Positions 9,827 through 63,693 of a DNA stretch of 64,000 nucleotides are shown piece by piece. A program made the translations under genes and the position numbers. Each line of letters begins with the position of its first letter. The first letter of the stretch is position 1. The notes under the pieces are model-generated. The model was given only the letters and a program-made list of their open reading frames with translations, did no database searches and was not told the origin of the DNA. The stretch comes from Macrostomum lignano (taxonomy: Eukaryota): positions 124,001 through 188,000 of the forward strand of contig NIVC01001481.1 of assembly GCA_002269645.1 (NCBI GenBank). The letters are read 5' to 3'.

Positions 9827-10966
9827 TTAGAATTCAAAAGGAAACATAATGCGCTTGGTGCGAATAGCGAACGCAACGTTAGCCAGCATGCTGGACACAT
9901 CAACGTTGGCACTTTCCCACAGCGTGCCGCTTGTGACAATAACCCAGAATAAAGCAGAAAACAGAGAGTGGCCCATGTTGCCCAGTGCGGCCTCCTCCGA
10001 GAATGGCACAGGGTTGCCCGTCTTCGACTCGTAGATCTCCTTGAATGTCCTGTAGAACTCCTTGGGGATCTTGTCCACGTGTTCCTGCATCGCCTCGGTC
10101 GACAAGCTAGAAATCATCAACAAGCCGAGGTCGAGGCCGAAAACACTGACGTCCCAGAACTGCCAATCAAATAGTCGACAAATCATGCTGCCTCCATCGC
10201 CCTTGAACATGAAGTTCGAGAACCAGAGGTCGCCATGCGATATTCCGACGGGCTCATCTGTGAACGCTGGAACCCCTTTCATTGGATCTGCGACTAAAGT
10301 TGCGATAAGCTTCTTCACAAGCTCTTGGATCAGCTCACGATCCGAATGTGACGGCACATGCTTGTGCAAGTTCTCAAAGAAGTACTTCGTGTTTTGTTCC
10401 AAAATTTCCTTGAGGTCAACGCCACTCTTCCGAATTCCATCACTAAATGGCGACTCGCGGCCGAACAGCACAGAGTCCAGCGAGTAGTTGAAGTTCACCC
10501 GAGCGATCCAGAACGCGGCCTGCAGTCGGGCAAGGGTCCTCACTACGCAGTAGGCCTGCTCGATGCCGAATGACTTCCGATCGACAAGGCTGAAGCCTTG
10601 CTTCGTCATGTCCTCCATAACGAGAATCGTGCCCTTGTCGCTGATCTTCTGACCGAAGGCTCTCGGGAACACCCGCTCAATGTTGTACTGCTCCATGACC
10701 CGCTCCAGCACTGGGCCCGTCAAACCATAGAACACGACCTCGGTACGACAGAAGTGGTTGCTGACCAACTGCAGCGCATTTAGGTCAGAACGAGACACAT
10801 CGCTAGATTTGACGAAGATATAGATAGGTACTTCGTTGTCTCTTGTAATTTTAACAGGCTTGCGGAAGCTGAGGTAACCACCTTGTCCAAACACCTCTTC
10901 TCCCTGAGTGATTTGCTTCTCAGAGTTCAGATCAAACAAGTGAACAAGTTCTGCTGCTATGTCCAT
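9827..10966 (-). CDS. Ecdysteroid-kinase-like (EcKinase/CHK) kinase paralog, 379 aa, intronless
   Basis: Motifs GQGGYLSFRK, IFVK, EVVFY, HGDLWFSN, LFDWQ. Confidence 0.9.
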   Translation of the reverse strand: MDIAAELVHLFDLNSEKQITQGEEVFGQGGYLSFRKPVKITRDNEVPIYIFVKSSDVSRSDLNALQLVSNHFCRTEVVFYGLTGPVLERVMEQYNIERVFPRAFGQKISDKGTILVMEDMTKQGFSLVDRKSFGIEQAYCVVRTLARLQAAFWIARVNFNYSLDSVLFGRESPFSDGIRKSGVDLKEILEQNTKYFFENLHKHVPSHSDRELIQELVKKLIATLVADPMKGVPAFTDEPVGISHGDLWFSNFMFKGDGGSMICRLFDWQFWDVSVFGLDLGLLMISSLSTEAMQEHVDKIPKEFYRTFKEIYESKTGNPVPFSEEAALGNMGHSLFSALFWVIVTSGTLWESANVDVSSMLANVAFAIRTKRIMFPFEF

Positions 10967-11919: not shown

Positions 11920-12800
11920 TAACCTCCCAGTTGCATCACCGACTTTCCAGGACGTCAGATTGCGCTAACACGAGTAATCTCTCAAATGTGTCACCGGACT
12001 CCCAGTACCTCACATTGCGCCAATAATCGCCCAAACGTCTCACAGCACTCCCAGAACCTCACATTGCGCCAATAATCTCCCAAACGTCTCACAGCACTCC
12101 CAGAACCTCACATTGCGACAATAATCTCCCAAACGTCTCACAGCACTCCCAGAACCTCACATTGCGCCAATAATCTCCCAAACGTCTCACAGCACTCCCA
12201 GTACCTCACATTGCGCCAATAATCTCCCAAACGTCTCACAGCACTCCCAGAACCTCACATTGCGCCAATAATCTCCCAAACGTCTCACCGCACTCCCAGA
12301 ACCTCACATTGCGCCAATAATCTCCCAAACGTCTCACAGCACTCCCAGTACCTCACATTGCGCCAATAATCTCCCAAACGTCTCACAGCACTCCCAGTAC
12401 CTCACATTGCGCCAAAAATCTCCCAAACGTCTCACAGCACTCCCAGAACCTCACATTGCGCCAATAATCTCCCAAACGTCTCACAGCACTCCCAGTACCT
12501 CACATTGCGCCAATAATCTCCCAAACGTCTCACAGCACTCCCAGAACCTCACATTGCGCCAATAATCTCCCAAACGTCTCACAGCACTCCCAGAACCTCA
12601 CATTGCGCCAATAATCTCCCAAACGTCTCACAGCACTCCCAGAACCTCACATTGCGCGAATAATCTCCCAAGTGTCACCGCACTCCCAGAACCTCAGACT
12701 ACACTAATAATCTCGCAAATGAGTCACCACACTCCCAGAGCCTCAGACTACACTAATAATCTCCCAAATGTGTCACCGGACTCCCAAAACCTCAGCCCTA
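11920..12800 (+). repeat. 49-bp minisatellite (ctcccagaacctcacattgcgccaataatctcccaaacgtctcacagca), about 14 near-perfect copies with degenerate copies at both ends
   Basis: Period measured between unit starts at 11999 and 12048. The homogeneous core runs about 11999-12670. Confidence 0.95.
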
Positions 12801-14215: not shown

Positions 14216-15549
14216 CTAGCAGCACTTCTTCTTAGACGACTGTCCAGGACTGACTCGGGTGATTCTCACGCCTCCGCCTGTGCCGCCACCGTCGGATGCG
14301 GCGCTCTGCGCACCCTTGGTCTTCAGAATCTCCGACGTTATTGTGCGAAACATCTGCAAATAACCATACGTACGGGGATTTATGACTGACTGGCTGACTG
14401 ACTGACTGGCTGACTGACTGACTGACTGACTGGCTGACTGACTGACTGAGTTACTGATTGACTGACTGACTGACTGGCTGACTGATTGACTGACTGATTG
14501 ACTGACTGACTGACTGAATGATTGACTGACTGACTGACTGACTGAATGATTGACTGACTGACTGACTGACTGACTGACTGACTGACTGACTGACTGACTG
14601 ACTGACTGACTGACTGATTGACTGACTGACTGACTGAATGACTGACTGATTGACTGACTGACTGACTGACTGACTGATTGACTGACTGACTGACTGATTG
14701 ACTGACTGAATGACTGACTGACTGACTGACTGACTGACTGACTGAATGACTGACTGACTGACTGACTGACTGACTGACTGACTGACTGACTGACTGACTG
14801 ACTGATTGACTGACTGACTGACTGAATGACTGACTGATCTATTAAGTTGCAATCGACAATGCAGAAGTTCCGAAGCCTTACCAAGTCAACATTAACATTG
14901 TCCTTAGCCGAGGTTTCAATACTCGGCACTCCGTATTCGTTAGCAACTGTTTTCAAATCCGAGGTTGCCACCGCTTTAGTCTCGGGACTGTCGTTCTTGT
15001 TGCCAACTAATTGGGTTTAAAAATAGAGATGCAGTTTTAAGATTTTATTTTTATAATTAGAAAAACATGAAAAGCTACTTTTAGTAGAATGAATGGCTAT
15101 CCTTAGCTCATCCACAGCCTAACTGAAATTATTACTGTTATTATTATTATTATTATGGTTATTCTTACCTAGCAGCTTAGACACATTCGATGGACAATTA
15201 TGGTTAATCTCCTCGAACCAGCGTTTAACGTTGGCAAAAGTGGGGCCAGAATTGACATCGTAAACCACAATGATACCGTGCGCACCTCGATAATATGTGG
15301 CAGTGATTGTGCGAAATCGTTCCTGACCTGCATTGCAGAGAAATTCAAAGTTAGTCATGGTTAACTAAGAAACTGCAAATTTCACAAATCTCCATCAGAA
15401 CTAACCAGCCGTGTCCCAAATCTGCAGTTTCACTCTGACTCCATCAATGTCGAGCGTTTTTATTTTGAAGTCAACACCGATGGTAGTGATGTAGTTGCTT
15501 GAAAATGTGTCATCAGTGTAGCGCAGGAGAAGAGCACTCTTGCCCACTC
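14216..15549 (-). CDS. RAB35: Rab35-like small GTPase, exons 2-5 (15549-15406, 15327-15169, 15006-14882, 14353-14216); exon 1 is at 31165-31111
   Basis: All junctions are GT-AG with matching phases. The spliced CDS is 621 nt = 206 aa: ..[100 protein letters not shown] and the basic CC prenylation tail are Rab35-type. Confidence 0.9.
14383..14837 (+). repeat. (GACT)n tetranucleotide microsatellite filling Rab35 intron 4
   Basis: About 450 bp of gact with occasional gatt/gaat/ggct variants. Confidence 0.97.
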
Positions 15550-26277: not shown

Positions 26278-27149
26278 GTGTGTGTCTTCGGCGAGAAAAC
26301 CATTCAGCTGAGCCACCGAGGGTGGGCCAGCTGAAGGAATTTTAAAACCTTGGGCTCGTCTTGAAGCGATCTTATTCCTTCCACTCCACACCGAATCCTG
26401 ATCTACTACACGTCATCCAGTGGTCTTTTGATTCTTCTTCGTCGCAAAAAGAGCAGTTTCTGGCTGGGTCCAGGCCCACCTTCTGCCTCCAGTAGCTGGT
26501 GTGCTTGCAGTGCCCACAACGCAGTTGAGCCATCAACACCTCTGTTTTACGGTTTACCGAGCATAGCACCCTCTTTTCACCAAACACGGCCTCCAATCTC
26601 TTGTTTTCACAGGACAAGCTGGCATCTCTCTTGAGGATCTGCCTCTTGATGCAACTCCAGTCCATGACCGTGTGATCCTGGCACATCCCTCCAGCTGCCT
26701 TTGCCTCCTGGTCAGCCTCTTCGTTTCCTTGGATACCGATATGACTCGGGATCCACTGTAGCCGGATCCCTGTCCTCTGGCTGGCACAGCGCAGCCTCCC
26801 GATGATGTTGTACATTCTGGCCGACAGGGGTGTCTTTTCGTCTCTGAGTTTAAGCAGCGCGGACTTGCTGTCCGTGCAGATAAGAGCACTGCGGGGCTTT
26901 TTTTCCTCGATAATATCCAGCGCTAAAACCACTGCCACTTCTTCCGCCACCAGTGAACTGCAGAACTTACCCACCACCACTCTACGGACTTCTTGGGCAT
27001 TATCCGTGAAGGCCACACACGCCGCTCCTCCATTTTTCTGCCCCTCGCCCACAGAACCATCAGTGAACAGCCACATTTCGAAGACACCGCAAGCCTCGAT
27101 GGTAGCTTCTGCTTCTTCCAAGAGGTTTTCATCCCCCTTCTTACCCCAG
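26278..27149 (-). mobile_element. 5'-truncated non-LTR retrotransposon (I-group/Ingi-like) 3' end encoding RNase H and a C-terminal zinc knuckle
   Basis: FTDGS, AEEVAV, TDSKSAL, WIPSHIGIQGNEEAD (RNase H), then QLRCGHC and C-x2-C-x8-H-x3-C. 14-bp TSD CAACATGCTGCTGT at 26264-26277 and 27150-27163. (CA)n tail at the 3' end. Confidence 0.93.
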
Positions 27150-27454
27150 CAACATGCTGCTGTTGCTGCTGTGCTTAGTGCTTCTTCTAGAACAACACTC
27201 CAGGCATTGACTGAGAATGAGCTTGATATCTCTGCTAGGCTAGTAACTCTACTTGAGCCACTTGATGAAGCCACTGAGCAGTTGAGTTGGGATGCTGAGT
27301 CAACATCTGTTCTGATTCCTATCATTTGAATGCTGCTACGTCAACTCTGCCAAAATCAGCAGTGTGCATCGGTCATTGATTAATGGAATCAAGAGCAGGT
27401 TCGAGTGCTTCCTGACAAATGAGTTCTATCAGGCTTTTACTGCCTTAGATGGCC

Positions 27455-27629
27455 ACACACATGCGCAACCTTGGGAATCACCCGGCCATTTCTATTGGCA
27501 ACACACACATGTAAGTCGCTATTGGCTGAGAGCAGTCACGTGACAAATATTCCATCCAATAGTGACTTACATGTGTGTGTGTGTTGCCAATAGAAACGGC
27601 CGGGTGAATCCCAAGGTTGCGCATAAGCA
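27455..27629. mobile_element. Palindromic MITE (about 65-bp arms starting ATGCGCAACC) inserted in the hAT transposase
   Basis: Arms about 27461-27525 and 27556-27624 are inverted copies. 9-bp duplication TAGATGGCC at 27446-27454 and 27630-27638. Removing the insert restores the hAT LDxxFK motif (ALDGPFK). Confidence 0.85.
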
Positions 27630-28739
27630 TAGATGGCCCCTTCAAATTGGCTTACTTTGATAGCTCTTAGCATGAAGCAATCAAGGACTACATTCTCCAA
27701 GAGCTTGGATCGTGTGCTCCACGTACCTTGTCTGTGGCTATAGCAGCAGGTTAGGTGGTAAAAAATTACAATGTTCATGTCCTTGGGCTTTACATGTATG
27801 TACCCCAATGCTCTTTACATTTCACAAACTATCTATTCCCTAACACAGGCAACGAGGAGTCGAACTACTATGCCAACAAAGAGCTCTTTAGAGCTCTTGG
27901 CTCTAAAGACGACAGCCATGAAACAATCAGTGCTGTTGCTGAATCTGAGGACCAAACTGCTAGAGCCGGCAAAACTAAATGTTTGTTGTTTTTGGAGGAG
28001 TTTCATGGCATCATTTAATCATCTCAGGCCCAAGGTCCTATGCCTGCTGGGAAAGCAGTGAAGGGTACTTCATAACTATTTTGCCAATCTAGAACTTCTG
28101 CCAATGAGTTCTGATCCTCTAGATCATTGGCGAAATAAATTGCGTTCAGACAACCTTCCATCAGACTTGAAGTCTCTCATTTGGCGCTATCTTGGTGCCC
28201 CACCAATGTTGGTGCCAAGTGAACTATTGTTTTCAAAGGCTAGCCAAATCTACGAACTAAGAAGATGAAATCTGAAGGGAGAAAATATCAAGCGCCTGCT
28301 GTTTTGGCCAGCAACATGCCGCAGCTGATTTGATGTAGTAACTCAACTGTTTTTTTGTGATTGACTATACTGAGAATAGTGACTAAATTTCACATTAATT
28401 CAAGATTGAGTCCTAGAAAGTTTAAGATTTTAGATTTGAAACTCTTAGATCGTTTTATATGTATGGTTGAGCTTATAGAAACATGGTTTTATTTGTTTGT
28501 TTTAGCCATTTAGCATTCTGCAGCTTGAGCACTTTTGATAGGAAATTTGAAACTATAACTTACGCAGGTACATTATTTAAAAAATTAAACTTTGATTCGA
28601 AATCATGCAGAAAAACAAAAGCATACTTATTTACTCATACTCAATCATTTGTGTATGTGCCATAAGCTGCCAAGCGGATACTCAGTGTTTATATCTATTA
28701 TATTATCTACTAAGCACTTATACAATGTGCAAGCATTTA

Positions 28740-42217: not shown

Positions 42218-42985
42218 GACCCCTGACAAACTGAATAATTCCCCTTGACGAATGAGCAATACCCCTGACAAACTGAATAATTCCCCTTGACGAATAAGCA
42301 TTACCCCTGACAAACAATAATTCTCATTGACGAATGAGTATTACCCCTGACAAACTGAATAATTCCCCTTGACGAATAAGCATTACCCCTGACAAACTGA
42401 ATAATTCCCCTTGACGAATAAGTATTACCCCTGACAAACTGAATAATTCCCCTTGACGAATAAGCATTACCCTGACAAACTGAATAATTCCCCTTGACGA
42501 ATAAGTGTTACCCCTGACAAACTGAATAATTCCCCTTGACGAATAAGCATTACCCCTGACAAACAATAATTCTCATTGACGAATGAGTATTACCCTGACA
42601 AACGGAATAATTCCCCTTGACTAATAAGCATTACCCTGACAAACTGAATAATTCCCCTTGACTAATAAGCATTACCCCTGACAAACTGAATAATTCCCCT
42701 TGACGAATAAGTATTACCCCTGACAAACTGAATAATTCCTTTTGATGAATAAGTATTACCCTTGAAAAACTGAATAATTCCCCTTGACGAATAAGTATTA
42801 CCCTTGACAAACGCAATAATTCCCATGGACGAATGAGTATTACCCCTGACAAACTGAATAATTCCCCTTGACGAATGAGCATTACCCCTGACAAACTGAA
42901 TAATTCCCCTTGACCAATGAGTAATACCCCTGACAAACTGAATAATTCCCCTTGACCAATGAAATGTCACCCCTGAAAAACTCAG
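42218..42985 (+). repeat. 42-bp minisatellite (acccctgacaaactgaataattccccttgacgaataagcatt), about 18 copies
   Basis: Direct reading; the 14-aa periodic translation in the ORF track confirms the period. Confidence 0.95.
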
Positions 42986-43619
42986 TAATTCAATAATTGA
43001 AATTCTTCAATAATGGAAGCAATTTTATACAAGACAACGAGCAAGCCATCGTTAGTCGCTTCAGGGGAGAAGGGAGAGGGGAGGCCAAATGATAAAAAGC
43101 CAGATCCCATCGCCTGGAGGTTTCGCTGCACATTCTCTCATCTCTCCCTCTTGCCGCCGCCATTCACATTATAACAGCTTGCTTGCCCAGGCTTTGCTGC
43201 TTCTGCTTTGCTGCTTCTGCTCTTCCATCCCAGCAATCCGCCTGTCTGACTGCGCACTCTTCCCGACTTGGTACCCCCCACTCCGACTGCCCGTCCCTCG
43301 CGTTTCCGATCTCCCTCTCTCATTTCTCCCATGCCAATCCCGGGCGCCAATATTTGTACTTCTTCTTCTGCAACCGAGCGCCTAACGCGCAATCCTACTT
43401 CTAAAAGAAGAAAAGCGAACCGTTGGCCCCTCTGTTCTTGGTCCGGTTTAGCATCGACCTGCGCAAAGTATTGTGTTGCTGGTGGTCGGGCAGGGACAAA
43501 ACATGCAATATTTTAGGGATTTTTTCCTCTGCTTGGAGGCCGCATCCCACTAGGTTCGCGGCCTCTGCCTAACAAAATGGAAACCAAGGAATGCCAGGTC
43601 CCTGTGTCTGTACTTCTCC

Positions 43620-44189: not shown

Positions 44190-45722
44190 CCTAAGCCAGC
44201 TATGACCGTAGCCTACTATGATCCTAAGCCAGCTATGACCGTAGCCTACTATGATCCTAAGTCAGCTATGACCGTAGCCTACTATGATCCTAAGCCAGCT
44301 ATGACCGTAGCCTACTATGATCCTAAGCCAGCTATGACCGTAGCCTACTATGATCCTAAGCCAGCTATGACCGTAGCCTACTATAACCCTAAGCCAGCTA
44401 TGACCGTAGCCTACTAACCCTAAGCCAGCTATGACCGTAGCCTACTAACCCTAAGCCAGCTATGACCGTAGCCTACTATGATCCTAAGTCAGCTATGACC
44501 GTAGCCTACTATGATCCTAAGCCAGCTATGACCGTAGCCTACTATAACCCTAAGCCAGCTATGACCGTAGCCTACTATGATCTTAACACAGCTATGACCT
44601 TAGCCTACTATGATCCTAAGACAGCTATGACCGTAGCCTACTATGATCCTAAGACAGCTATGACTGTAGCCTACTATGATCCTAAGACAGCTATGACTGT
44701 AGCCTACTATGATCCTAAGACAGCTATGACTGTAGCCTACTATGACCCTAAGACAGCTATGACTGTAGCCTACTATGATCCTAAGTCAGCTATGACCGTA
44801 GCCTACTATGATCCTAAGCCAGCTATGACCGTAGCCTACTATAACCCTAAGCCAGCTATGACTGTAGCCTACTATGATCCTAAGCCAGCTATGACCGTAG
44901 CCAACTATGATCCTAAGCCAGCTATGACCGTAGCCTACTATGATCCTAAGCCAGCTATGACCGTAGCCTACTAACCCTAAGCCAGCTATGACCGTAGCCT
45001 ACTAACCCTAAGCCAGCTATGACCGTAGCCTACTATGATCCTAAGTCAGCTATGACCGTAGCCTACTATGATCCTAAGCCAGCTATGACCGTAGCCTACT
45101 ATAACCCTAAGCCAGCTATGACCGTAGCCTACTATGATCCTAACACAGCTATGACCTTAGCCTACTATGATCTTAACACAGCTATGACCTTAGCCTACTA
45201 TGATCCTAAGACAGCTATGACCGTAGCCTACTATGATCCTAAGACAGCTATGACTGTAGCCTACTATGATCCTAAGACAGCTATGACTGTAGCCTACTAT
45301 GATCCTAAGACAGCTATGACTGTAGCCTACTATGACCCTAAGACAGCTATGACTGTAGCCTACTATGATCCTAAGCCAGCTATGACCGTAGCCTACTATG
45401 ATCCTAACACAGCTATGACCTTAGCCTACTATGATCTTAACACAGCTATGACCTTAGCCTACTATGATCCTAAGACAGCTATGACCGTAGCCTACTATGA
45501 TCCTAAGACAGCTATGACCGTAGCCTACTATGATCCTAAGACAGCTATGACTGTAGCCTACTATGATCCTAAGACAGCTATGACTGTAGCCTACTATGAC
45601 CCTAAGACAGCTATGAATGTAGCCTACTATGATCCTAAGACAGCTATGACTGTAGCCTACTATGACCCTAAGCCAGCTATGACCGTAGCCTACTATGATC
45701 CTAAGAATGACTGTAGCCTACT
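44190..45722 (+). repeat. 33-bp minisatellite (cctaagccagctatgaccgtagcctactatgat), about 46 copies with higher-order structure
   Basis: 11-aa periodic translation (MTVAYYDPKPA); variant units recur in blocks. Confidence 0.96.
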
Positions 45723-46542: not shown

Positions 46543-47068
46543 TCGGTGCAGCGCCAACTCCCCTTATCTCCCCCGACCGGCGGCCTCTTCGCTGGCTTCC
46601 TGTCTCGTCTCCTTTTTGTCTCCTTGTTAGGCTTTTCTCACAGGTAGTGATCTTTCTCTCTTTCCCTCTCTCTCCCTCTCTCACTCTCCTCTCTCTTTCT
46701 CTCTCTCGCTCTCTCTCCCTCTCTCTCTCTCCCTCTCTCCCTCTCTCCTCCCTCTCCCCATCTCACTCTCTCCCCCTCTCCCTCTCTCACTCTCCTTCTC
46801 TCTCTCCCTCCCTCTCCTCCTCTCCTTCTCTCTGACCTTTACCTGTCTCACTGGCTTAAACTTCGACTTGCTGCTTGCTGCTGCTTCTATGCGTATGTTC
46901 TCATCATAGCTTGTATGTTAAGTCTGCTTTAGGGTCCCTTTTCAAATTCTAGATTTCGTTTGGGAGCTGTACAGCATTTTGATCATTTGGGAGTTGAATT
47001 TTGAGGCCAAAATGATGACAAGGTTACTAAAAGTTCAAGTATTCAAAAGGTAAGAATGGAGCTCAAAT

Positions 47069-48008
47069 GAGGGGAGATTCTACTGAGGTAAGATTCTACT
47101 GAGGGGGGATTCTACTGAGGGGGATTCTACTGAGGGGGGATTCTACTGAGGGGGATTCTACTGAGGGGAGATTCTACTGAGGGGAGATTCTACTGAGGGA
47201 AGATTCTACTGAGGGGAGATTCTACTGGGGGGAGATTCTACTAAGGGAAGATTCTACTAAGAGGAGATTCTACTGAGGGGATTCTACTGAGGGGAGATTC
47301 TACTGAGGGGAGATTCTACTGAGGGAAGATTCTACTGAGGGGAGATTCTACTGAGGGGAGATTCTACTGAGGGAAGATTCTACTGAGGGAAGATTCTACT
47401 CTTAGAATCTTAGAGGGGAGATTAGAGGGGAGATCTCTCTTAGAGGGGAGATTCTACTGAGGGAAGATTCTACTGAGGGAAGATTCTACTGAGGGAAGAT
47501 TCTACTGAGGGAAGATTCTACTAAGAGGAGATTCTACTGAGGGGATTCTACTGAGGGGAGATTCTACTGAGGGGAGATTCTACTGGGGGGAGATTCTACT
47601 GAGGGAAGATTCTACTGAGGGGAGATTCTACTGAGGGGGGATTCTACTGAGGGAAGATTCTACTAAGAGGAGATTCTACTGAGGGGATTCTACTGAGGGG
47701 AGATTCTACTGAGGGGAGATTCTACTGAGGGGGGATTCTACTGAGGGAAGATTCTACTAAGAGGAGATTCTACTGAGGGGATTCTACTGAGGGGAGATTC
47801 TACTGAGGGGAGATTCTACTGAGGGAAGATTCTACTGAGGGGAGATTCTACTGGGGGAGATTCTACTGAGGGAAGATTCTACTGAGGGGAGATTCTACTG
47901 GGGGAGATTCTACTGAGGGAAGATTCTACTGAGGGGAGATTCTACTGGGGGAGATTCTACTGAGGGAAGATTCTACTGAGGGGAGATTCTACTGGGGGAG
48001 ATTCTACT
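47069..48008 (+). repeat. 16-bp minisatellite (gaggggagattctact), about 58 copies
   Basis: Direct reading, with G-run length variants. Confidence 0.96.
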
Positions 48009-48489
48009 GCTGTACGAGCCGATTGTTTGAAAATTAAACTTAATTACAATCACAAAGTATTATGAATTTAATATCGTACGAGTGTATTACAATGTATTGT
48101 ATCCATGGGGAAAATAGAGGAATTTTCAGAATCTATGCTATTCATATCCGCTTGCTTTTTTTCTATTTTTGTCTGTTGAGTCTGCTTAAAGTATTTGGTT
48201 CTCTATCTCTCTATTTGCCCGCCTCTCTTTTGCGTCCTCTTTGTCGCAGAGCTGGTTCGTTACGCATATATGAGTACAGATAATTATTGTCTAGTTTATT
48301 TTTGTCAGTTCTGCTACACAGCACAAGTCAGAGACCACTTCGAATAAACAGAGCTCCCGAGCACAGCCCATCAATTGTCTGCTTATATCATTTATAAATA
48401 CAGCCTACAGTACCACTGCATTCTGCTATTAAATATCGAAGACGTTACTTGAACTACTTTTATCATATTTCATTTTTAAAGCTGTTAAA

Positions 48490-48492
48490 GAC

Positions 48493-48566
<74 letters not shown>

Positions 48567-48607
48567 AAGACAGACAGAAAGACAGACAGACAGACAGACA
48601 GACAGAA

Positions 48608-48668
<61 letters not shown>

Positions 48669-48695
48669 GGCAGACACACAGACAGACAGACACTA

Positions 48696-48748
<53 letters not shown>

Positions 48749-48751
48749 CTA

Positions 48752-48782
<31 letters not shown>

Positions 48783-48845
48783 TAGACAGACAGACAGACA
48801 GACAGACACACAGACAGACAGACACTAAGACAGACAGACAGACAC

Positions 48846-48912
<67 letters not shown>

Positions 48913-48983
48913 CTAAGACAGACAGACAGACAGACAGACAGACAGGCAGGCAGACAGGCAGACAGACAGACAGACAGACACTA

Positions 48984-49064
<81 letters not shown>

Positions 49065-49155
49065 GGCAGACAGACAGACAGACAGACAGACGGACAGACG
49101 GATAGACAGACAGGCAGACAGACAGACAGACAGACAGACACTAAGACAGACACTA

Positions 49156-49239
<84 letters not shown>

Positions 49240-49247
49240 GGACAGAC
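48490..49247 (+). repeat. (GACA)n microsatellite with recurring cactaa / ggca interruptions
   Basis: Direct reading. Confidence 0.97.
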
Positions 49248-52312: not shown

Positions 52313-53818
52313 TCACGTTAGTGGTGGCAGTTGCTTCACAGCCGCCGTCCTCTTGATGGGGCCTCGCTTCGGGTCGATGACACGCTGATCTGGTGGAATA
52401 TTTCTGTAAAGTGAAAAGTCAAGAGAAAAAATACACTAAAAGGATAGGAACAATTGAAATTTCGCCGGAACTTTGCCTTGTCTCTGTATGTTGGCAGAGA
52501 TCATGATTACATCAGAAAAAGCTTGATAAAACTTGTGAATGCACCTCAAAATAAAACACATCCTAGTTGTTGCCTCATTGGAAATACTGAAGTCCTGAAA
52601 GTAGAGTCGTGGTAAGGTACATCGAGATCGAGATCTTTTGAATGAATCCCAGGATGCTTTGATCAAGATCAAGGGTAATCGTCGCTGCACTTACTTGAGC
52701 GAAATACCGTGCCTCTTTCCCTGGTGAGCCGATTCGCGATTGACCAAGTCAGCCGAAAAGTTCGCAGCGTCTGCTGGCTGCACGGACAGTCGCAGGGCGT
52801 TGAGCTGCGCGCTTACAGAGCTGGCGTTCTGTTGAACCGCCTTTCGCTCCTCGTTGGCCTTGTGATATGCCTGATAGTAGCATGTAGCGGGTTTTGGTAG
52901 AATTAATGTACTTTATGGACGTTTCAAGATTTTTGGACAAATTCAAATCGAAGGGCTGGAATTGAGAGCCAATTGACATTTAAGAATGCAATTAGATTTC
53001 GAGAGACGGGACTTACAAGTATATACAGTAGTTGTATGTAAATATAGCTTTGTAGCTTTTTTCTAGAGTGTTATAAATTTTTACCTTGGCTTCTTGTTCG
53101 ATCCGCAGCTCAATGTCAAACAACTGATTCATCAAAGCTCGCTTCTCAGCCTCCAAAGCGGAAAGAAGGCCGCTTGAAGCGTCATCGCCGAACTCCCCTG
53201 GTGGCGCGTTTGCTTTCGAGCTTTTCTTATCTAGAAAGTCGGGGAAAGCTTGCTTAATTTTATTGGCTTCAGTTTATTTGCTTAAGTTTATTCGATTTAA
53301 ACTATCCTCACATGACTGCGACTTGCTTGCTGCAGTGGCCACCTTGACTTGTAGCGTAGCCGCCTGCTTTCTTAGTTGTTCATTCATTTCCTGCTGAATT
53401 TCGTAGCGCGTCTTCCATTCGCTGTCTGCAAATCGAGTTGAATAAGTACGAACATAAAGCAATCATTAAAAAGTAAAAGTAAACCATATTTACTCCACTT
53501 TGAACTTCGAGGCTTACTTTGCTCATCACTATTTTGCCTTTGCTCTTCTAGCTCGGATATCGCAATATCAAGCTCGTCGCAGTAATTTTCAAGAGTGTCT
53601 CTGCAATTTTTGTGCACAAAAATTATCGTTGGGCTGTTTTTATGAAAAATGCCTGGATTGTCGAGGAGGTTTCTGTTCCGTAGACTGTAGCCATTGATTT
53701 TGCATTTGATACAGGACACAAATGGATTACACAGGCGAAAAATGCAAACTTACTTGTACTTTCTTTCTTGGGAAACAATAGACCGCAATTGATCTATTTC
53801 AAAATGTTCCGAAAACAT
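52313..53818 (-). CDS. CCDC169: CCDC169-like coiled-coil protein, 6 exons (53818-53754, 53684-53518, 53425-53312, 53230-53085, 52870-52695, 52403-52313), 252 aa
   Basis: All introns are GT-AG and phase-consistent (759 nt). Peptides LDIAISELE, SEWKTRYEIQQEMNEQL, LEAEKRALMNQL..RIEQEAKAYHKANEER and NIPPDQRVIDPKRGPIKRTAAVKQLP match the CCDC169 family pattern as recalled. Confidence 0.82.
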
Positions 53819-55469
53819 AGCGCATTCCCAGTACGTCAAGTTAAAACTAATACCAAACCAAAGTAGCTAGCTTTAAAAAGAATATTTACCATCAAGTTGA
53901 TTTTATGCACCACTCTATAAAATCAACTTTAAATTCCACTTTTTAAATATAAAATCTTTCTTATATGTTTTACGCAGCAGTTTTTTGACAAAACTCAGCT
54001 ACAAACTAGTCTACTTAAATAATAAAATTTAAACTTTTGATTTAGTACGTAAAATTTTTTAAACTCGTTGAATCTTCCGCGAAATATACAAGAAACCAAA
54101 CTGAAACTCCTTTAAATCCTCCTGTTTCGTATGCTGAAGTTTAATATGATATATATATTCTACAATTACACAAATTTTTACAAATACATTACCGTGTCTA
54201 ATATTCTTCAATGTGGTTAATCATTCTTTTTTCAAATTACTTAGTTTATTCATAGGATTTTCATTATACACTCTATTTCATTTTGTTAAATAAATAATTA
54301 TTATTCAAACAACCATTTACTAGATGAAAACTATACGTGCGTATGGATTCCGGTTTTTTTTTTTACTGTCCTAATACTTCTCTAAATTTTGAAAGAAATT
54401 AAACCCGGATTTCTGATGTAGGGATAAAATTTAATTTAATAATAGCATCTAGCGATATATTTATGGGTGTGGACCTGGGTGGGGGGGGGGGTCAAGGAGG
54501 CTATGGCTCCCCCCAGCCCCAGCTAGTGGCCAAAAATGGGCCATACTTTTTTATAACTATGCATCTTACATATAGATTTTCTAATATTTTCTTGTAGTTG
54601 CTTGATATAGCTTGCTTTTTAAAAATTATGACTATTTAGATTTCTATTAATATTACTATTGTATTAGAATAATAGGGCATAATATATGCTAATATTAAAA
54701 ATTATCAGATGGGATACTTTATTTTCTAAGTAAATATTTTATATATGCTATAAAATATAAAATATTTTTAATACCACTTATAAACTTATTATTATAAAGT
54801 AAAAATATACAGTTTTAGTACTAAAATTTATTGAAAACTTACCTTTTAAATTTAGTTATCCTTAGTATTTAAGTCTAGGTTAATATAAAAATTAGAAATC
54901 TTTTTAAGTTTTTTAATATCAATGACTCTAGCTAATAGTAATAGGTTATATCATCTAAGCAAAATTGTTTTCCTTGCAGCTAATACAAGAAGTACTACTG
55001 TTAATGTTATATAAGTACCTTATTAATAGGGATATGTATGTACTTGGCATTTTGTTGATTGCTTTTTGCTGATACCAGCACTTTGGACATTGCTAGCAGT
55101 GGTTTACATTTGTGTCTAGACCTTGTGTACCTCTTTTGACATGCTTGACTAGCTAATAATATAATTTGTTGTTATTGATTGTTATTAAAATAAAGAATTT
55201 TTGTTTAGATTTAACTTGATACATAATTTATGTTAAAAGTAAATTAATGTTTACTCATATGCATCATATTATTATTCTAGATTTGAGCAACTTTCCTAAA
55301 TATCATATTGTTACATTACTGCTTTAGTCTTGGCATACCTAGCTAAGAAAGTTTTATATAATATTTAATAACAAAAGACAAAGAATCTTATGCCAATGTA
55401 GCTTTAAACATTCAAAGCATTTTTGTTTTAATTTTTTTAAAAGCATCTAAACATTTTACCCAACTATCT

Positions 55470-56072
55470 ATGATGCTGAGTAGCAGCATCACCAGTGTGT
55501 GCGTGGCATCCTCTGATTTGCCCGCCTGCCAAGCAATCGGCCAATGGGACGCCAAAGTCATCATGGCTGTCTGCAGGCCACACCACCAACTACAGCAGCC
55601 TCGCCATCTCCTTCTGGTCGCCTTTGATCAGCACGCGGTGCACGAGCGCGTGCTCCTGGAGCACCTCGCCAAGCGTTGGTCTCGACATCCGCGCCGGCGC
55701 CAGTGCAGTCGCGCCAGGCTGCAGAGCGCCAGCTGCCGCGCCGCCATCCGATTCGGCGACATTCTTCGCCGTCGAGAATGCGCCGAACTGCTCAGCTTGC
55801 TGCGCCACTGCTCGGCGCCATTTCAGTGCGCGCACGGTAGGCAGGCTGTCTGGCCGATTGCCCGGCTCAACCCGTTGATCGATGAGGGAAAGGGCGACGC
55901 GGCTGACTACATTTTGGAGGCGTTGCGCTCTGCCGTCCCGACGCCCGCGCCCATTTCCGATTCAGTTTCGGGTCCGTCATCTGAGCAGCGCGCATTTTCG
56001 TCAACATTTCTATCTGACAGAGAGTTGCCATCGTTGGCTGTTGATTTCAAAGTTTGCTCGGACATTTTTTAA
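55470..56072 (+). CDS. MLH3: MLH3-like MutL C-terminal endonuclease/dimerisation module, 200 aa, with no ATPase domain and no regulatory subdomain
   Basis: GQWDAKVI (cf. GQVDxKFI), DQHAVHERVLLE (DQHA-x2-E-x4-E), SCRAAIRFGD (ACR motif) and CSAPFQCAHGR (the FQCAHGRP form is MLH3-type). GC/CpG-rich coding signature inside AT-rich flanks. The start codon, or terminal-exon status, is uncertain. Confidence 0.8.
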   Translation: MMLSSSITSVCVASSDLPACQAIGQWDAKVIMAVCRPHHQLQQPRHLLLVAFDQHAVHERVLLEHLAKRWSRHPRRRQCSRARLQSASCRAAIRFGDILRRRECAELLSLLRHCSAPFQCAHGRQAVWPIARLNPLIDEGKGDAADYILEALRSAVPTPAPISDSVSGPSSEQRAFSSTFLSDRELPSLAVDFKVCSDIF

Positions 56073-56562: not shown

Positions 56563-58137
56563 TTAATCAACAATGCTAGGGTTCGAGCAGGCGACATCTT
56601 CCGAGTTGGGATAGCCGTGATAGAAGATGTTCCACAGTATGCCGAACAGAATGAGCACAGAGGCGGCCACGATGGCTACGATGGACACCACGCCCTCCCA
56701 GGGCTTCTTGTCGATGTTGCGTAGCACAGGTGTGCCAACCAGCAGTCCAGCCAGCATGCCGCCAACATGAGCTGAGACGCTCATCGGCACCTTGAGCGTC
56801 AGAGCGTAGCGTCTGTAGGCTGCTACGCCAAAGTCTACGCCAACAAATAGTGTCAGGTAGACTAGCGTCATAACTCCGCTGAGCAGGAATTTCAACGGGT
56901 TGCTGCGGCACTTCAGCCAGTCGCTTTGCAGTTCCTCCCAGTTCATCAGCACCGTGGCGTAGTGAGCACCAATCAGAGAGTAGACTCCGCCAGATGCGCC
57001 AACCATAGCCGTCTTGGGATCGATGATGCTGCTGGCCAGGGCGCCGGCGAATACGCCGATTAAGAATACCGGGCCAACGCGCCAGATTTTGTGCACAGTC
57101 TCCAGTGGTACACCGAGAATGAGGCCGAGAACAGTGTTGAATACGATGTGATGGTAGCCGTCGTGCAGCAACATGTAGCTGATAAAGCGCCAAGCCTGCT
57201 GACGGACGCTTGGGCAGAACACTAACGGACTGTAGTAGGGCAGGCCACTCTCCCAGCTGACGTGGTTCCAGTCTGGTCCGCGGTTCAGCTCTACAGCGTA
57301 GATGATGAAGAAGATCCAGATGATCACGAACAGCAGAGGCATGAATATAGGCGGCGGTCTGCAGTTGTAGGCCTCCAGGTAGGACTCCTCCGGGATTGGC
57401 TCGCCTTCGTTTGCCGCTTCCTTCTTTGTTTCGCGAACCTTTCGCTTAGCGGCGGGCGTCAGCTTCTTAATGACCTTGTTAACTACTTTTTCGCTTTTTT
57501 TCACCTCGGTCTTTTTTGTATACTTCATGCCGTTGTAGAATTCGTTCCAGGACACCCGGCGATTGCCGTCCTTGTCCAGCTGTTTAAATAGGCATTTCAG
57601 CTTGTACTTGCGACCGAGCTCGTTCTCGTACTGTTTGATCAGGGCATCAAAATCTTCGATTAGCATGCCGCCCTGCGGTTCAAATGGTTCGAAGTGATGC
57701 TTGAAGGTTACTGTTAGCCATGCCCGGTAGCTCTCTTCGTCTACTCCACTTTGCTGCTGCTGTTCCTGCAGCTGCACGTAGGGGGGACCGCCGCCGCGGG
57801 AGCTGCCACCGCCCGGCTTGCGACTGCCGCCGCTGCCGCTTCCAGTGGTGCTGATTGTGACGCTGGCTGCTGGCGCGCGGCGTTGCGGCTGCTGCTGCTG
57901 TTGCTCCATCGGGATGTCCATGCCCGGATCAAAGGTGCCGTACTGTTGCTGCTGCTGCATCATGTCGGATTCTTCTTCTTTCTGCTGCTGCTGCTGCCGC
58001 TGGGGCTGCTGTCGTTGGGGCTGCTGTGGCTGCTGTTGCACCTGCTGCGTCATGTCGGGTTCCTCCTGCTGCTGTTCCTGGCCATAGTCGAAAGTGGCTC
58101 GGGCTCGACTAGGCTGTTGCTGTCGCTGCTGTTCCAT
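56563..58137 (-). CDS. Rhomboid intramembrane serine protease with an N-terminal poly-Gln region and an EF-hand (RHBDL/rhomboid-4-like), 524 aa, intronless
   Basis: EF-hand loop DKDGNRRVSWNE; QAWRFISYMLLH (WR motif); HIVFN; catalytic GASGG; AHVGG (catalytic His); multiple hydrophobic segments. Confidence 0.93.
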   Translation of the reverse strand: MEQQRQQQPSRARATFDYGQEQQQEEPDMTQQVQQQPQQPQRQQPQRQQQQQKEEESDMMQQQQQYGTFDPGMDIPMEQQQQQPQRRAPAASVTISTTGSGSGGSRKPGGGSSRGGGPPYVQLQEQQQQSGVDEESYRAWLTVTFKHHFEPFEPQGGMLIEDFDALIKQYENELGRKYKLKCLFKQLDKDGNRRVSWNEFYNGMKYTKKTEVKKSEKVVNKVIKKLTPAAKRKVRETKKEAANEGEPIPEESYLEAYNCRPPPIFMPLLFVIIWIFFIIYAVELNRGPDWNHVSWESGLPYYSPLVFCPSVRQQAWRFISYMLLHDGYHHIVFNTVLGLILGVPLETVHKIWRVGPVFLIGVFAGALASSIIDPKTAMVGASGGVYSLIGAHYATVLMNWEELQSDWLKCRSNPLKFLLSGVMTLVYLTLFVGVDFGVAAYRRYALTLKVPMSVSAHVGGMLAGLLVGTPVLRNIDKKPWEGVVSIVAIVAASVLILFGILWNIFYHGYPNSEDVACSNPSIVD

Positions 58138-59980: not shown

Positions 59981-60460
59981 AATTCAATGCTCTCCCGATA
60001 CAGGATTTTGGCCATAGAAAATCGTCGAAGCACGGGTTGAATATGGTTGGCCGTGTCTTGAATTCAATGCTCTCCCCTTGTACGGTTTTGGCCATAGACA
60101 ATCGTCGAAGCACGGGTTGAATATGGTTGGCCGTGTCTTGAATTCAATGCTCTCCCCTTGTACGGTTTTGGCCATAGACAATCGTCGAAGTACGGGTTGA
60201 ATATGGTTGGCCGTGTCTTGAATTCAATGCTCTCCCCTTGTACGGTTTTGGCCATAGACAATCGTCGAAGTACGGGTTGAATATGGTTGGCCGTGTCTTG
60301 AATTCAATGCTCTCCCCTTGTACGGTTTTGGCCATAGACAATCGTCGAAGTACGGGTTGAATATGGTTGGCCGTGTCTTGAATTCAATGCTCTCCCCTTG
60401 TACGGTTTTGGCCATAGACAATCGTCGAAGTACGGGTTGAATATGGTTGGCCGTGTCTTA
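59981..60460 (+). repeat. 80-bp tandem repeat x6
   Basis: Units start at 59981, 60061, 60141, 60221, 60301 and 60381. The first is diverged; the rest are near-identical. Confidence 0.96.
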
Positions 60461-62613: not shown

Positions 62614-62650
62614 GTGCGTCCTAAGTTGATGCAGCTTATTTGAACTCTTT

Positions 62651-63693
62651 GAACTCAGAGGTCCCGAATCTGAAATCATGGATACCGAATCTAAAATCAG
62701 AGATCCCGAATCTGAAATCAGAGATCTCGAATCTGAAATCAGAGATCCCGAATCTGAAATCAGAGATCCCGAATCTGAACACAGAGATCCCGAATCTGAA
62801 GTCAGAGATCCCGAATCTGAAATCAGAGATACCGAATCTGAAATCAGAGATCCCGAATCTGAACTCAGAGATCCCGAATCTGAACTCAGAGATCCCGAAT
62901 CTGAAATCAGAGATACCGAATCTGAAATCAGAGATCCCGAATCTGAAATCAGAGATACCGAATCTGAAATCAGAGATCCCGAATCTGAACTCAGAGATCC
63001 CGAATCTGAACTCAGAGATCCCGAATCTGAAATCAGAGATACCGAATCTAAAATCAGAGATCCCGAATCTGGACTCAGAGATCCCGAATCTGAAATCAGG
63101 GATACCGAATCTGAAATCAGCGATCCCGAATCTGAACTCAGAGATCCCGAATCTGAACACAGAGATCCCGAATCTGAAATCAGCGATCCCGAATCTGAAA
63201 TCAGAGATCCCGAATCTGAAATCAGAGATCCCGAATCTGAACTCAGAGATCCCGAATCTGAACTCAGAGATCCCGAATCTGAACTCAGAGATCCCGAATC
63301 TGAACACAGAGATCCCGAATCTGAACACAGAGATCCCGAATCTAAACACAGAGATCCCGAATCTGAAATCAGCGATCCCGAATCTGAAATCAGCGATCCC
63401 GAATCTGAACTCAGAGATCCCGAATCTGAACTCAGCGATCCCGAATCTGAACACAGAGATCCCGAATCTGAGCTCAGAGATCCCGAATCTGAACTCAGAG
63501 ATCCCGAATCTGAACACAGAGATCCCGAATCAGAACTCAGAGATCCCGAATCTGAACTCAGAGATCCCGAATCTGAACACAGAGATCCCAAATCTGAACT
63601 CAGAGATTCCGAATTTGAACTCAGAGATCCCGAATCTGAACACAGAGATCCCGAATCTGAACTCAGAGATCCCGAATCTAAACACAGAGATCC
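62651..63693 (+). repeat. 21-bp minisatellite (gaatctgaaatcagagatccc), about 50 copies, in the EPS8-like intron
   Basis: Direct reading; 7-aa periodic translations in five frames. Confidence 0.96.

What the first reader, a model, noticed from the sequence alone, without database searches (positions are those of the whole stretch)
55470..56072. Stripped-down MLH3-type endonuclease: all catalytic motifs kept, ATPase and regulatory subdomain gone
Seen: an uninterrupted, GC/CpG-rich 200-codon ORF carries GQWD.K, DQHAVHERVLLE, SCRAAIRFGD and FQCAHGR in order, with only 23 residues between the DQHA-x2-E-x4-E motif and the ACR-type motif. Established: in MutL, PMS2 and MLH3 this interval is more than 100 residues and forms the regulatory subdomain, which in MutL/PMS2 carries the sliding-clamp-binding motif; the GHKL ATPase is N-terminal. 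Seen: only 1.65 kb of AT-rich DNA separates the ORF from the oppositely oriented CCDC169 start, and I found no GHKL motifs in the window. Inference: this may be a stand-alone minimal MutL-gamma nuclease/dimerisation module uncoupled from ATP and clamp control (for example a meiotic crossover factor or a dominant regulator of MLH1), or one half of a split gene.
Basis: partly seen in the sequence, partly recalled or inferred. Interest (0 to 1): 0.72.

Follow-up and report, generated by a model that had tools for sequence, protein, structure and literature searches.

The report
Stand-alone minimal MLH3 nuclease domain gene
The flatworm Macrostomum lignano carries a small transcribed gene that encodes only the metal-binding dimerisation core of the crossover nuclease MLH3, without its ATPase half or regulatory lobe. 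Similar mini-genes turn up in glass sponges and a few other eukaryotes, which suggests this nuclease core can work, or be regulated, on its own.

Summary
Window 55470-56072(+) is an uninterrupted 200-codon ORF in Macrostomum lignano (contig NIVC01001481.1; GenBank gene BOX15_Mlig028803). It carries GQWDAK, DQHAVHERVLLE, SCRAAIRFGD and FQCAHGR in order. Only 23 residues sit where yeast Mlh3 has about 128.

The short interval is not an assembly artefact, because three loci share it, including a diverged homeolog. AlphaFold2 with Foldseek gives a confident MutL dimerisation-subdomain fold. Its best full-coverage match is the Aquifex MutL endonuclease domain, which naturally lacks the regulatory subdomain.

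tblastn with ten full-length MLH3 proteins found no ATPase or transducer exon anywhere in the 64 kb. The neighbour 1.65 kb upstream is a divergently oriented DUF4600/CCDC169 gene. The ORF differs from its homeolog as little as the adjacent rhomboid CDS does, and about ten-fold less than the flanks.

The same architecture exists in glass sponges as a syntenic single-exon gene (dN/dS 0.18), in a microsporidian, and in unnamed eukaryotes.

Three things remain unresolved:
- the true N-terminus, because the annotated CDS is 5'-partial and starts after a CAG acceptor;
- whether M. lignano also has a full-length MLH3 or a separate ATPase gene;
- activity and partner.

Verdict: a new variant of a known family, of moderately high interest.

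The parts
55470..56072 (+). mini-MLH3 ORF, 200 codons plus TAA; GenBank gene BOX15_Mlig028803 (5'-partial CDS from 55497)
   Evidence: window is 100% identical to NIVC01001481.1
55470..55475 (+). two adjacent candidate start codons (ATG ATG). The first is TGC in homeolog L001; the second (55473) is kept in all copies.
55493..55495 (+). CAG directly before the first base of the annotated 5'-partial CDS. Putative SL trans-splice (or cis) acceptor; inferred, not shown.
   Evidence: CDS starts at 55497; annotation method; SL sequence and acceptor motif
55530..55574 (+). beta strands 1-2 of the dimerisation subdomain, including the GQWDAK motif (55539-55556)
   Evidence: AF2 strands 21-26 and 30-35; Q25, D27, K29 invariant among short forms
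55626..55661 (+). DQHAVHERVLLE, i.e. the DQHA(X)2E(X)4E endonuclease motif, at the start of helix 54-71
55662..55730 (+). 23-residue basic linker (HLAKRWSRHPRRRQCSRARLQSA). It replaces the regulatory subdomain, which is about 100-130 residues in other MLH3s.
55731..55760 (+). SCRAAIRFGD, i.e. the ACR-type metal-ligand motif, in helix 81-91
55821..55841 (+). FQCAHGR, the MLH3-type C(P/N/A)HGRP motif; here followed by Q rather than P
55875..56069 (+). lineage-specific C-terminal tail (residues 136-200). One predicted helix at 144-155; residues 169-200 have pLDDT below 50.
   Evidence: no homolog alignment beyond about residue 135
53819..55469 (.). AT-rich (18-41% GC) non-coding spacer shared with the divergently oriented DUF4600 gene. 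It has no MLH3-like coding sequence.
52313..53818 (-). upstream neighbour, the DUF4600/CCDC169-type gene (224-aa product, spliced)
56563..58137 (-). downstream convergent neighbour, a single-exon EF-hand rhomboid protease gene. Used here as the coding-divergence yardstick.

Best explanation
This is a genuine, transcribed, intronless M. lignano gene. Its product is a minimal MLH3: only the dimerisation subdomain of the MutL C-terminal endonuclease domain, a four-stranded sheet plus the helices carrying DQHA(X)2E(X)4E, SCR and CAHGR. A 23-residue linker replaces the regulatory subdomain. There is no GHKL ATPase/transducer half, and a disordered 65-residue tail follows.

Inferred mechanism: the protein pairs through its beta-sheet face with the C-terminal domain of MLH1, or less likely with itself as bacterial MutL does. 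The conserved His/Glu/Cys/Cys/His ligands and the Arg of CAHGR bind two Zn/Mn ions and nick DNA. The result would be a MutL-gamma-like nuclease with only MLH1's ATPase and no MLH3 regulatory lobe.

Shown: sequence, fold, copy conservation, absence of N-terminal exons in cis, and existence of equivalent conserved genes in other lineages.

Inferred: partner, catalysis and biological role (meiotic crossover resolution and/or mismatch repair).
For: Homology:
- Yeast Mlh3 CTD matches at E=1.4e-15, with the split match described above.
- The exhaustive search gave 2345 hits at E<=1e-3, and the named ones are MLH3.

Fold:
- The AF2 model has pLDDT of about 90 over residues 11-130.
- Foldseek finds Pms1 and Mlh3 CTDs at E about 5e-7, and the Aquifex MutL endonuclease domain with TM 0.76-0.79 normalised to the target.
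- All ligand positions are invariant across 27 short and normal sequences: D53 Q54 H55 A56 E59 R60 E64 C89 C120 H122 G123 R124.

Stand-alone status:
- There is no MLH3 N-terminal match in the 64 kb, and the method's positive control worked.
- The upstream neighbour is on the opposite strand.
- The three upstream bases that differ between homeologs fall right at the first ATG, while the 600 bp after it differ at only 2.

Real gene:
- It is annotated from RNA-only evidence.
- GC3 is 0.69, like the neighbour.
- Divergence from homeolog L001 is 2/600 in the ORF and 4/1575 in the rhomboid CDS, against 17/440 and 10/489 in the adjacent non-coding DNA. Fisher p=1.5e-4.

A viable architecture:
- Glass-sponge genes of about 240 aa have the same deletion. 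They are syntenic in three assemblies and form a single-exon NCBI gene model in Oopsacas minuta.
- Their dN/dS is 0.18 (0.14 in the CTD), and dS is saturated between more distant pairs while the catalytic motifs stay intact.
- Bacterial CTDs without a regulatory subdomain are active endonucleases (PMC10366529).
Against: - Both substitutions between the homeologs are non-synonymous (A28T, H38R) and none is synonymous. So selection on the protein is not demonstrated in M. lignano itself.
- The GenBank CDS is 5'-partial and starts at 55497, right after a CAG. If the mRNA is SL-trans-spliced there, both ATGs are lost. The SL's own ATG is out of frame (stop after 6 codons). The next in-frame ATG is M32, which would delete strand 1 and most of strand 2.
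- CAHGR is followed by Q rather than the canonical P.
- The Pfam MutL_C score is 15.2, below the 25-bit threshold.
- No partner, activity or expression pattern was testable.
- In yeast, Mlh3 ATPase mutants are defective (my knowledge). An N-terminus-less subunit may therefore not be sufficient.
- Whether a full-length MLH3 exists elsewhere in the genome is unknown.
Confidence: 0.5

Rival explanations
1. Relict fragment. The ORF is a 5'-truncated, internally deleted leftover or retrocopy of MLH3. It is transcribed at a low level but no longer makes a functional protein. Crossover resolution relies on a full-length MLH3 elsewhere or on other nucleases.
For: - The only two differences between homeologs are non-synonymous.
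- The annotated CDS is partial, and the transcript appears to start downstream of the ATGs.
- The first ATG is destroyed in L001.
- The tail is long, disordered and lineage-specific.
- The gene is intronless, as expected for a retrocopy.
Against: - The ORF is intact in all three loci.
- It is ten-fold less diverged than the flanking DNA.
- Every catalytic and structural motif is retained, including the N-terminal GQxDxK strand.
- A 47%-identical ORF with the same deletion and the same AT-rich/GC-rich layout exists in another organism (L005).
- The same architecture is under purifying selection in sponges.
Confidence: 0.2
2. Non-catalytic MLH1 binder. The module keeps the dimerisation face and titrates or scaffolds MLH1. 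It would compete with PMS2 or full-length MLH3, acting as a regulator rather than a nuclease.
For: - The dimerisation subdomain is the part retained.
- DNA-binding and ATPase functions of the N-terminal half are missing.
- The P-to-Q change in CAHGRP.
Against: A pure binder has no need for the metal ligands and the catalytic Arg. Yet these are invariant in every short form from flatworm, sponges, microsporidian and unnamed taxa.
Confidence: 0.15
3. Split gene. The MLH3 N-terminal ATPase/transducer half is encoded by a separate gene. It would rejoin the module non-covalently or by RNA trans-splicing.
For: - The CDS start coincides with a splice acceptor.
- Trans-splicing is pervasive in M. lignano.
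- Sponge short forms keep the WW-like linker motif that in full-length MLH3 lies between the two halves.
Against: - No N-terminal half lies within 55 kb upstream or 8 kb downstream.
- Known M. lignano trans-splicing adds only the 35-nt leader.
- In Oopsacas the upstream gene, 106 bp away, is a complete P5-ATPase.
- The split would still not explain the missing regulatory subdomain.
Confidence: 0.1
4. Assembly or annotation artefact: a collapsed or mis-joined region that removed 300-400 bp from a normal MLH3 exon.
For: None found.
Against: - The interval is identical in three separate contigs of the PacBio-based assembly, one of them a homeolog 2-4% diverged in its flanks.
- The reading frame is preserved.
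- The same 22-31-residue interval occurs in independent assemblies of other taxa.
Confidence: 0.02

Closest known systems
Eukaryotic MLH3, the endonuclease subunit of MutL-gamma (yeast Mlh1-Mlh3 CTD structures 6SHX/6SNS/6RMN)
   Same: Best sequence match (E=1.4e-15). It has the MLH3-type signatures GQxDxK, DQHAxHER, ACR-type and FQCAHGR. The predicted fold matches the Mlh3/Pms1 dimerisation subdomain.
   Different: It lacks the N-terminal half: GHKL ATPase, transducer and long linker. It also lacks the regulatory subdomain of about 128 residues. It has Q instead of P after CAHGR and a novel 65-residue tail.
Aquifex aeolicus MutL C-terminal endonuclease domain (5B42, 5Z42, 8H1G)
   Same: It is a natural MutL endonuclease domain without a regulatory subdomain (PMC10366529). 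It is the best full-coverage structural match (TM 0.74-0.79 on the target, 126 columns). The metal-ligand motifs are the same.
   Different: Aquifex MutL is bacterial and homodimeric, has CPHGRP, and is still fused to an N-terminal ATPase domain. Sequence identity is only about 21%. The loss is independent.
Glass-sponge short MLH3 genes (Oopsacas minuta LOD99_13526, 244 aa, plus seven ENA sponge-assembly orthologs); annotated only as hypothetical proteins
   Same: They are stand-alone, single-exon, have no ATPase, and show the same clean excision of the regulatory subdomain (interval 24-29 residues). All catalytic motifs are kept, and they are under purifying selection.
   Different: They carry about 100 extra N-terminal residues with a WW-like GREVVIDPLTGNSYY motif from the MLH3 linker. 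The genomic neighbourhood differs (P5-ATPase upstream). They share 32-37% identity with the flatworm protein and do not group with it in a tree.
PMS2/Pms1 (MutL-alpha endonuclease subunit; 4E4W, 4FMO)
   Same: Same domain family and metal site; Foldseek E about 5e-7.
   Different: The sequence match is much weaker (E=0.02). PMS2 uses CPHGRP and carries the clamp-binding motif in the regulatory subdomain that is absent here.
Microsporidian MutL-like protein (Hamiltosporidium tvaerminnensis, 323 aa, P0206)
   Same: It has a short 24-residue interval, no recognisable GHKL domain, and intact motifs.
   Different: It has about 230 unrelated N-terminal residues. It comes from a lineage known for extreme protein reduction.

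Membership tests
MutL-family endonuclease C-terminal domain | DQHA(X)2E(X)4E motif | tested here: met
   D53-QHAVHERVLL-E64, invariant positions in the 27-sequence alignment
MutL-family endonuclease C-terminal domain | ACR/SCK cysteine motif | tested here: met
   S88-C89-R90; aligned to yeast Mlh3 and B. subtilis MutL
MutL-family endonuclease C-terminal domain | C(P/N/A)HGRP motif with catalytic Arg | tested here: met
   C120-A-H122-G-R124. The residue after R is Q, not P; the same Q occurs in normal-length relatives P0002 and P0003.
MutL-family endonuclease C-terminal domain | dimerisation-subdomain fold (four-stranded sheet plus motif helices) | tested here: met
   AF2 pLDDT about 90 for residues 11-130; Foldseek probability 1.00 to Pms1, Mlh3, Aquifex and B. 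subtilis MutL CTDs
MutL-family endonuclease C-terminal domain | regulatory (external) subdomain between helix A and the ACR helix | tested here: not met
   23 residues instead of about 100-130. Not universal in the family, since it is absent in Aquifex MutL.
MutL-family endonuclease C-terminal domain | Pfam MutL_C (PF08676) above gathering score | tested here: not met
   15.2 bits against a cut-off of 25. Only model positions 17-42 of 142 match, because the model is largely regulatory subdomain.
MutL-family endonuclease C-terminal domain | metal-dependent DNA nicking | not testable with these tools
   Needs recombinant protein and a plasmid-nicking assay.
MLH3 orthologue (MutL-gamma subunit) | closer to MLH3 than to PMS2/PMS1/MLH1 | tested here: met
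   Mlh3 E=1.4e-15 against Pms1 E=0.023; FQCAHGR signature; named database hits are MLH3
MLH3 orthologue (MutL-gamma subunit) | N-terminal GHKL ATPase and transducer domain in the same polypeptide | tested here: not met
   No tblastn hit at E<1 in the 64 kb with ten full-length MLH3 queries. The control fragment in L009 was detected.
MLH3 orthologue (MutL-gamma subunit) | heterodimer with MLH1 through the C-terminal domains | not testable with these tools
MLH3 orthologue (MutL-gamma subunit) | is the only MLH3-type gene of the genome (true orthologue rather than an extra paralogue) | not tested
   The M. lignano genome could not be searched. The last protein search returned nothing informative.
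Aquifex-type minimal MutL | endonuclease domain without regulatory subdomain | tested here: met
Aquifex-type minimal MutL | bacterial homodimeric MutL with fused ATPase domain | tested here: not met
   Eukaryotic, MLH3-type sequence, no ATPase in cis. It resembles this type; it is not a member.

The most novel reading that the evidence does not exclude
Mini-MLH3 is a functional, recurrently evolved stand-alone nuclease subunit, found in flatworm, glass sponges and reduced fungi. With MLH1 it would form a single-ATPase MutL-gamma lacking any MLH3 regulatory lobe. In these lineages it would be the only MLH3, so crossover-specific nicking would not require the MLH3 ATPase or regulatory subdomain.
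Probability: 0.25. Interest if true: 0.8.

Novelty: new variant of a known kind. Interest (0 to 1): 0.6.

Why it matters
MutL-gamma (MLH1-MLH3) makes the biased nicks that turn double Holliday junctions into meiotic crossovers. It also drives triplet-repeat expansion. How its nuclease is licensed is an open question; the candidates are the two ATPase domains, the regulatory subdomain, PCNA, MSH4-MSH5 and EXO1.

A natural MLH3 reduced to the metal-binding dimerisation core is an evolutionary deletion experiment. If it is active, the MLH3 N-terminal half and regulatory lobe are dispensable in some animals, or are replaced by other factors. If it is a regulator, it is a new kind of MLH1 modulator.

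M. lignano has RNAi, transgenesis and transparent gonads, so the question can be tested directly.

There is also a practical point. These proteins fall below the Pfam MutL_C threshold and are labelled 'hypothetical'. Meiotic-toolkit surveys would therefore score MLH3 as absent, or would miss that it is truncated.

Tried and rejected
- Exact-product look-ups of the 200-aa and 199-aa forms, in the hope of finding RNA-derived Logan contigs that would fix the 5' end. Neither is on record.
- A search for a full-length M. lignano MLH3 through the N-terminal part of the closest normal-length relative, P0152. It returned only its own cluster. The question stays open, and all three protein searches are spent.
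- Literature. No paper links M. lignano, flatworms, sponges or microsporidia to a truncated MLH3, and none mentions Mlig028803. The supplements of two M. lignano papers contain no MLH3, MLH1 or PMS2 entry. The run accession of L005 could not be traced.
- Single origin of the short forms. A neighbour-joining tree on 120 shared columns gives support only to the sponge clade. The flatworm protein sits without support near two normal-length metagenomic sequences that share VAFDQHAVHERVLLE and CAHGRQ. I therefore do not claim either one ancient paralogue or convergence, though scattered taxa and different N-termini favour repeated loss.
- An intron at CAHG|GTAGGC. Rejected, because the read-through RQAVWPIARL aligns with RPSIVPLADL of other MLH3s.
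- An upstream coding exon in the 54400-54600 GC blip. Rejected: it is a G-run low-complexity piece next to an indel between homeologs and has no MLH3 similarity.
- The bacterial promoter/terminator scan is uninformative for a eukaryote.
- For normal-length sponge-like ORFs of about 400 aa that also start at the WW-like motif (L012), no N-terminal exon lies within 10 kb. With larger introns possible there, I draw no conclusion.
Full report
**Observation**

Window 55470-56072(+) is an uninterrupted ORF of 200 codons. It is about 62% GC and sits in DNA of 18-30% GC. It contains, in order:
- GQWDAK (residues 24-29)
- DQHAVHERVLLE (53-64)
- SCRAAIRFGD (88-97)
- FQCAHGR (118-124)

Exactly 23 residues lie between E64 and S88.

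phmmer against all PDB sequences gives yeast Mlh3 CTD as the best hit (6shx_B, E=1.4e-15). The alignment is in two pieces, ORF 6-66 to chain 3-60 and ORF 84-133 to chain 189-238. So 17 residues stand where Mlh3 has 128. B. subtilis MutL (8e-4), Aquifex MutL (0.011) and yeast Pms1 (0.023) follow. Pfam MutL_C matches only model positions 17-42 of 142, at 15.2 bits, below the 25-bit cut-off.

225 fall at 70-220 residues and a separate class falls at 22-31. This ORF is in the short class.

**Source and copies**

The protein is 99% identical to GenBank PAA83126.1, 'hypothetical protein BOX15_Mlig028803g2, partial [Macrostomum lignano]'. The window is 100% identical over 18.5 kb to NIVC01001481.1 of assembly GCA_002269645.1.

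Two further loci carry the gene in the same order: RhoGEF, DUF4600(-), mini-MLH3(+), rhomboid(-).
- NIVC01002395.1 is identical across the ORF and its flanks.
- NIVC01000432.1 (L001) is a diverged homeolog.

All have the same short interval, so an assembly collapse is excluded.

**Is it stand-alone?**

tblastn of ten full-length MLH3 proteins (chytrid, spiders, tick, oyster, limpet, bryozoan, insects, shrimp) against the whole window at E<1 hits only the two CTD pieces inside the ORF. The same queries do detect a diverged N-terminal fragment in control locus L009.

The nearest upstream gene, DUF4600/CCDC169-type, is on the opposite strand. Its start lies 1652 bp from the ATG. The DNA between them is AT-rich and non-coding. 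Between the homeologs, substitutions are frequent up to and including the first ATG (ATG to TGC in L001) and then almost stop. That fits a coding start at the second ATG (55473).

The GenBank annotation of this assembly was derived only from RNA evidence. The pipeline used StringTie/TACO transcripts, cut transcripts at mapped spliced-leader sites, and called ORFs with TransDecoder (PMC5730564). So the locus is transcribed.

However, the annotated CDS is 5'-partial and starts at 55497, directly after CAG 55493-95. This implies a transcript model that begins there, most simply at an SL trans-splice acceptor. The published acceptor motif is [T/C]TNCAG, and the SL is CGGTCTCTTACTGCGAAGACTCAATTTATTGCATG (PMC8629364).

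On such an mRNA the SL's ATG is out of frame and meets a stop after six codons. The first in-frame ATG would then be M32. That would remove strand 1 and most of strand 2 of the fold. This conflicts with the conservation of the GQxDxK strand. It is the main unresolved point about the gene model.

**Fold**

AlphaFold2 on a 27-sequence alignment gives pLDDT of about 90 for residues 11-130. The predicted elements are strands 21-26, 30-35, 48-53 and 127-132, and helices 54-71, 81-91 and 101-111. Residues 169-200 are disordered.

Foldseek against the PDB returns only MutL-family CTDs as significant hits: Pms1 (5e-7), Mlh3 (6e-7), Aquifex MutL (3e-5, TM 0.74-0.79 on the 102-residue target) and B. subtilis MutL. 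The Aquifex domain is the documented natural case of a MutL endonuclease without a regulatory subdomain (PMC10366529). The product is therefore the dimerisation subdomain alone, with the complete metal site.

**Constraint**

Against homeolog L001, divergence is as follows:

| Region | Differences |
|---|---|
| mini-MLH3 ORF | 2/600 sites |
| rhomboid CDS | 4/1575 |
| upstream flank | 17/440 |
| intergenic spacer | 10/489 |
| beyond the rhomboid | 13/1133 |

The ORF is significantly less diverged than its adjacent flanks (Fisher p=1.5e-4). GC3 is 0.69, against 0.70 in the rhomboid. The ORF does not evolve like the surrounding non-coding DNA.

Both of its differences are non-synonymous (A28T, H38R), at positions that vary among homologues. 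The rhomboid's four differences are all synonymous. Protein-level purifying selection is therefore not demonstrated within M. lignano.

**Relatives with the same architecture**

The exhaustive phmmer search found three hits that cover both motif blocks in a single stretch: P0005, P0006 and P0015. A profile of these and the ORF then recovered a family.

- *Glass sponges.* Eight proteins of 237-287 aa, one of them Oopsacas minuta LOD99_13526. They start with a WW-like GREVVIDPLTGNSYY motif, which in full-length MLH3 lies in the linker, and continue into a CTD with a 24-29-residue interval. In three assemblies the gene is a single ORF 106-709 bp downstream of a complete P5-ATPase gene, with conserved neighbours. 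In Oopsacas it is a separate NCBI gene model. dN/dS between two species is 0.18 (0.14 in the CTD). dS is saturated against Oopsacas while the motifs stay intact.
- *L005.* A 147-aa ORF on Logan contig L005 has 47% identity over the aligned region. It shows the same pattern of GC-rich ORF in AT-rich DNA, and a polypyrimidine-AG three bases before its ATG.
- *An unnamed compact-genome eukaryote.* ORFs of 135 and 132 aa. The 135-aa one lies 183 bp from a divergent COX6B gene.
- *A microsporidian.* Hamiltosporidium tvaerminnensis, 323 aa, with no recognisable GHKL domain.

All keep D, Q, H, E, E, C, C, H, G and R of the active site. A neighbour-joining tree on the 120 shared columns supports only the sponge clade. 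The short forms cannot be shown to share one origin. Their scattered taxa and different N-termini favour repeated loss of a lobe that is inserted between two adjacent helices.

**Most likely mechanism**

I infer that the protein dimerises through its sheet with the MLH1 C-terminal domain, as MLH3 and PMS2 do, or with itself as bacterial MutL does. It would then use the conserved ligands and Arg124 for two-metal nicking. The invariance of catalytic residues in every short form argues for a nuclease rather than a mere MLH1 binder.

The protein would lack:
- the MLH3 ATPase;
- the DNA-binding N-terminal half;
- the lobe that carries the clamp-binding motif in MutL-alpha.

Licensing would therefore have to come through MLH1 or other partners.

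My confidence that this is a real gene for a minimal MLH3 module is about 0.75. My confidence that it is an active MLH1-partnered nuclease is about 0.4. The rivals are a decaying fragment (0.2), a non-catalytic MLH1 regulator (0.15), a split gene (0.1) and an artefact (0.02).

**Comparison and novelty**

By sequence the ORF belongs to the MLH3 branch of the MutL family. It fails two features of a canonical MLH3, the N-terminal ATPase and the regulatory subdomain, and it falls below the Pfam threshold. It resembles the Aquifex minimal endonuclease domain but is not a member of that bacterial group.

I found no description of stand-alone, regulatory-subdomain-less MLH3 genes in eukaryotes in the searchable literature. 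I rate it a new variant of a known kind. It is more interesting than a lone truncated paralogue, because equivalent genes are conserved under selection in glass sponges.

**Limits**

I could not search the M. lignano genome for a full-length MLH3, an orphan ATPase or MLH1. I had no access to RNA reads and could not model a heterodimer. These are the decisive next steps.

Noticed in passing
window 3813-10966: Four single-exon paralogues of the ecdysteroid-kinase-like (EcKL, PF02958) family, 377-386 aa each, lie in alternating orientation within 7 kb. This is a local tandem expansion.
   Followed up: partly
window 11975-12794, 42219-42991, 44190-45706, 47068-48009, 59981-60459, 62650-63693: Many long tandem arrays with periods of 49, 42, 33, 16/94, 80 and 21 bp. 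The 33-bp array reads as a long 'MTVAYYDPKPA' ORF, and several arrays create spurious ORFs. Long (AGAC)n and (TGAC)n tracts lie at 48489-49247 and 14383-14837.
   Followed up: partly
window 56563-58137 (-): A single-exon 524-aa rhomboid protease with an EF-hand pair and a glutamine-rich N-terminus. It is convergent with the mini-MLH3 gene, with a 490-bp spacer. All four differences from the homeolog are synonymous.
   Followed up: partly
window 26372-27325 (-) and 27455-27634: An ORF with an RNase H domain, probably a retroelement. Next to it is a repeat of about 170 bp. A copy of that repeat is inserted 455 bp upstream of the mini-MLH3 ATG in homeolog L001 only.
   Followed up: partly
L004, L010, L011 (sponge short forms); P0011, P0014, P0016, P0017, P0012: MLH3 proteins carry a conserved WW-like motif (for example W..K D..TG+..YIN..TGNS) and a W.NP.F motif in the linker just before the C-terminal domain. 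Pfam WW matches the Ciona fragment weakly (E=0.009). Glass-sponge mini-MLH3 proteins begin exactly at this motif.
   Followed up: partly
L012 (ENA ERZ25066847) and proteins P0053, P0126, P0176, P0181, P0184, P0186, P0095: ORFs of about 380-420 aa from other sponge-like assemblies also start just upstream of the WW-like motif, but they keep a full regulatory subdomain. No MLH3 N-terminal exon lies within 10 kb upstream in L012. An ATPase-less MLH3 may therefore be wider among sponges, or the introns there are simply long.
   Followed up: partly
L008, L009 (JGI metagenome contigs; P0002, P0003, P0152): Normal-length MLH3 C-terminal domains from unidentified eukaryotes share the flatworm's unusual VAFDQHAVHERVLLE and CAHGRQ signatures. 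P0152 joins part of the transducer domain to the CTD through a very short linker, which makes it a compact full-length MLH3.
   Followed up: partly
window 55182-55317: A 136-bp stretch of the AT-rich upstream spacer has no difference between the homeologs, while the DNA on either side has many. It is possibly a promoter or regulatory element of the divergent gene pair, or chance.
   Followed up: no
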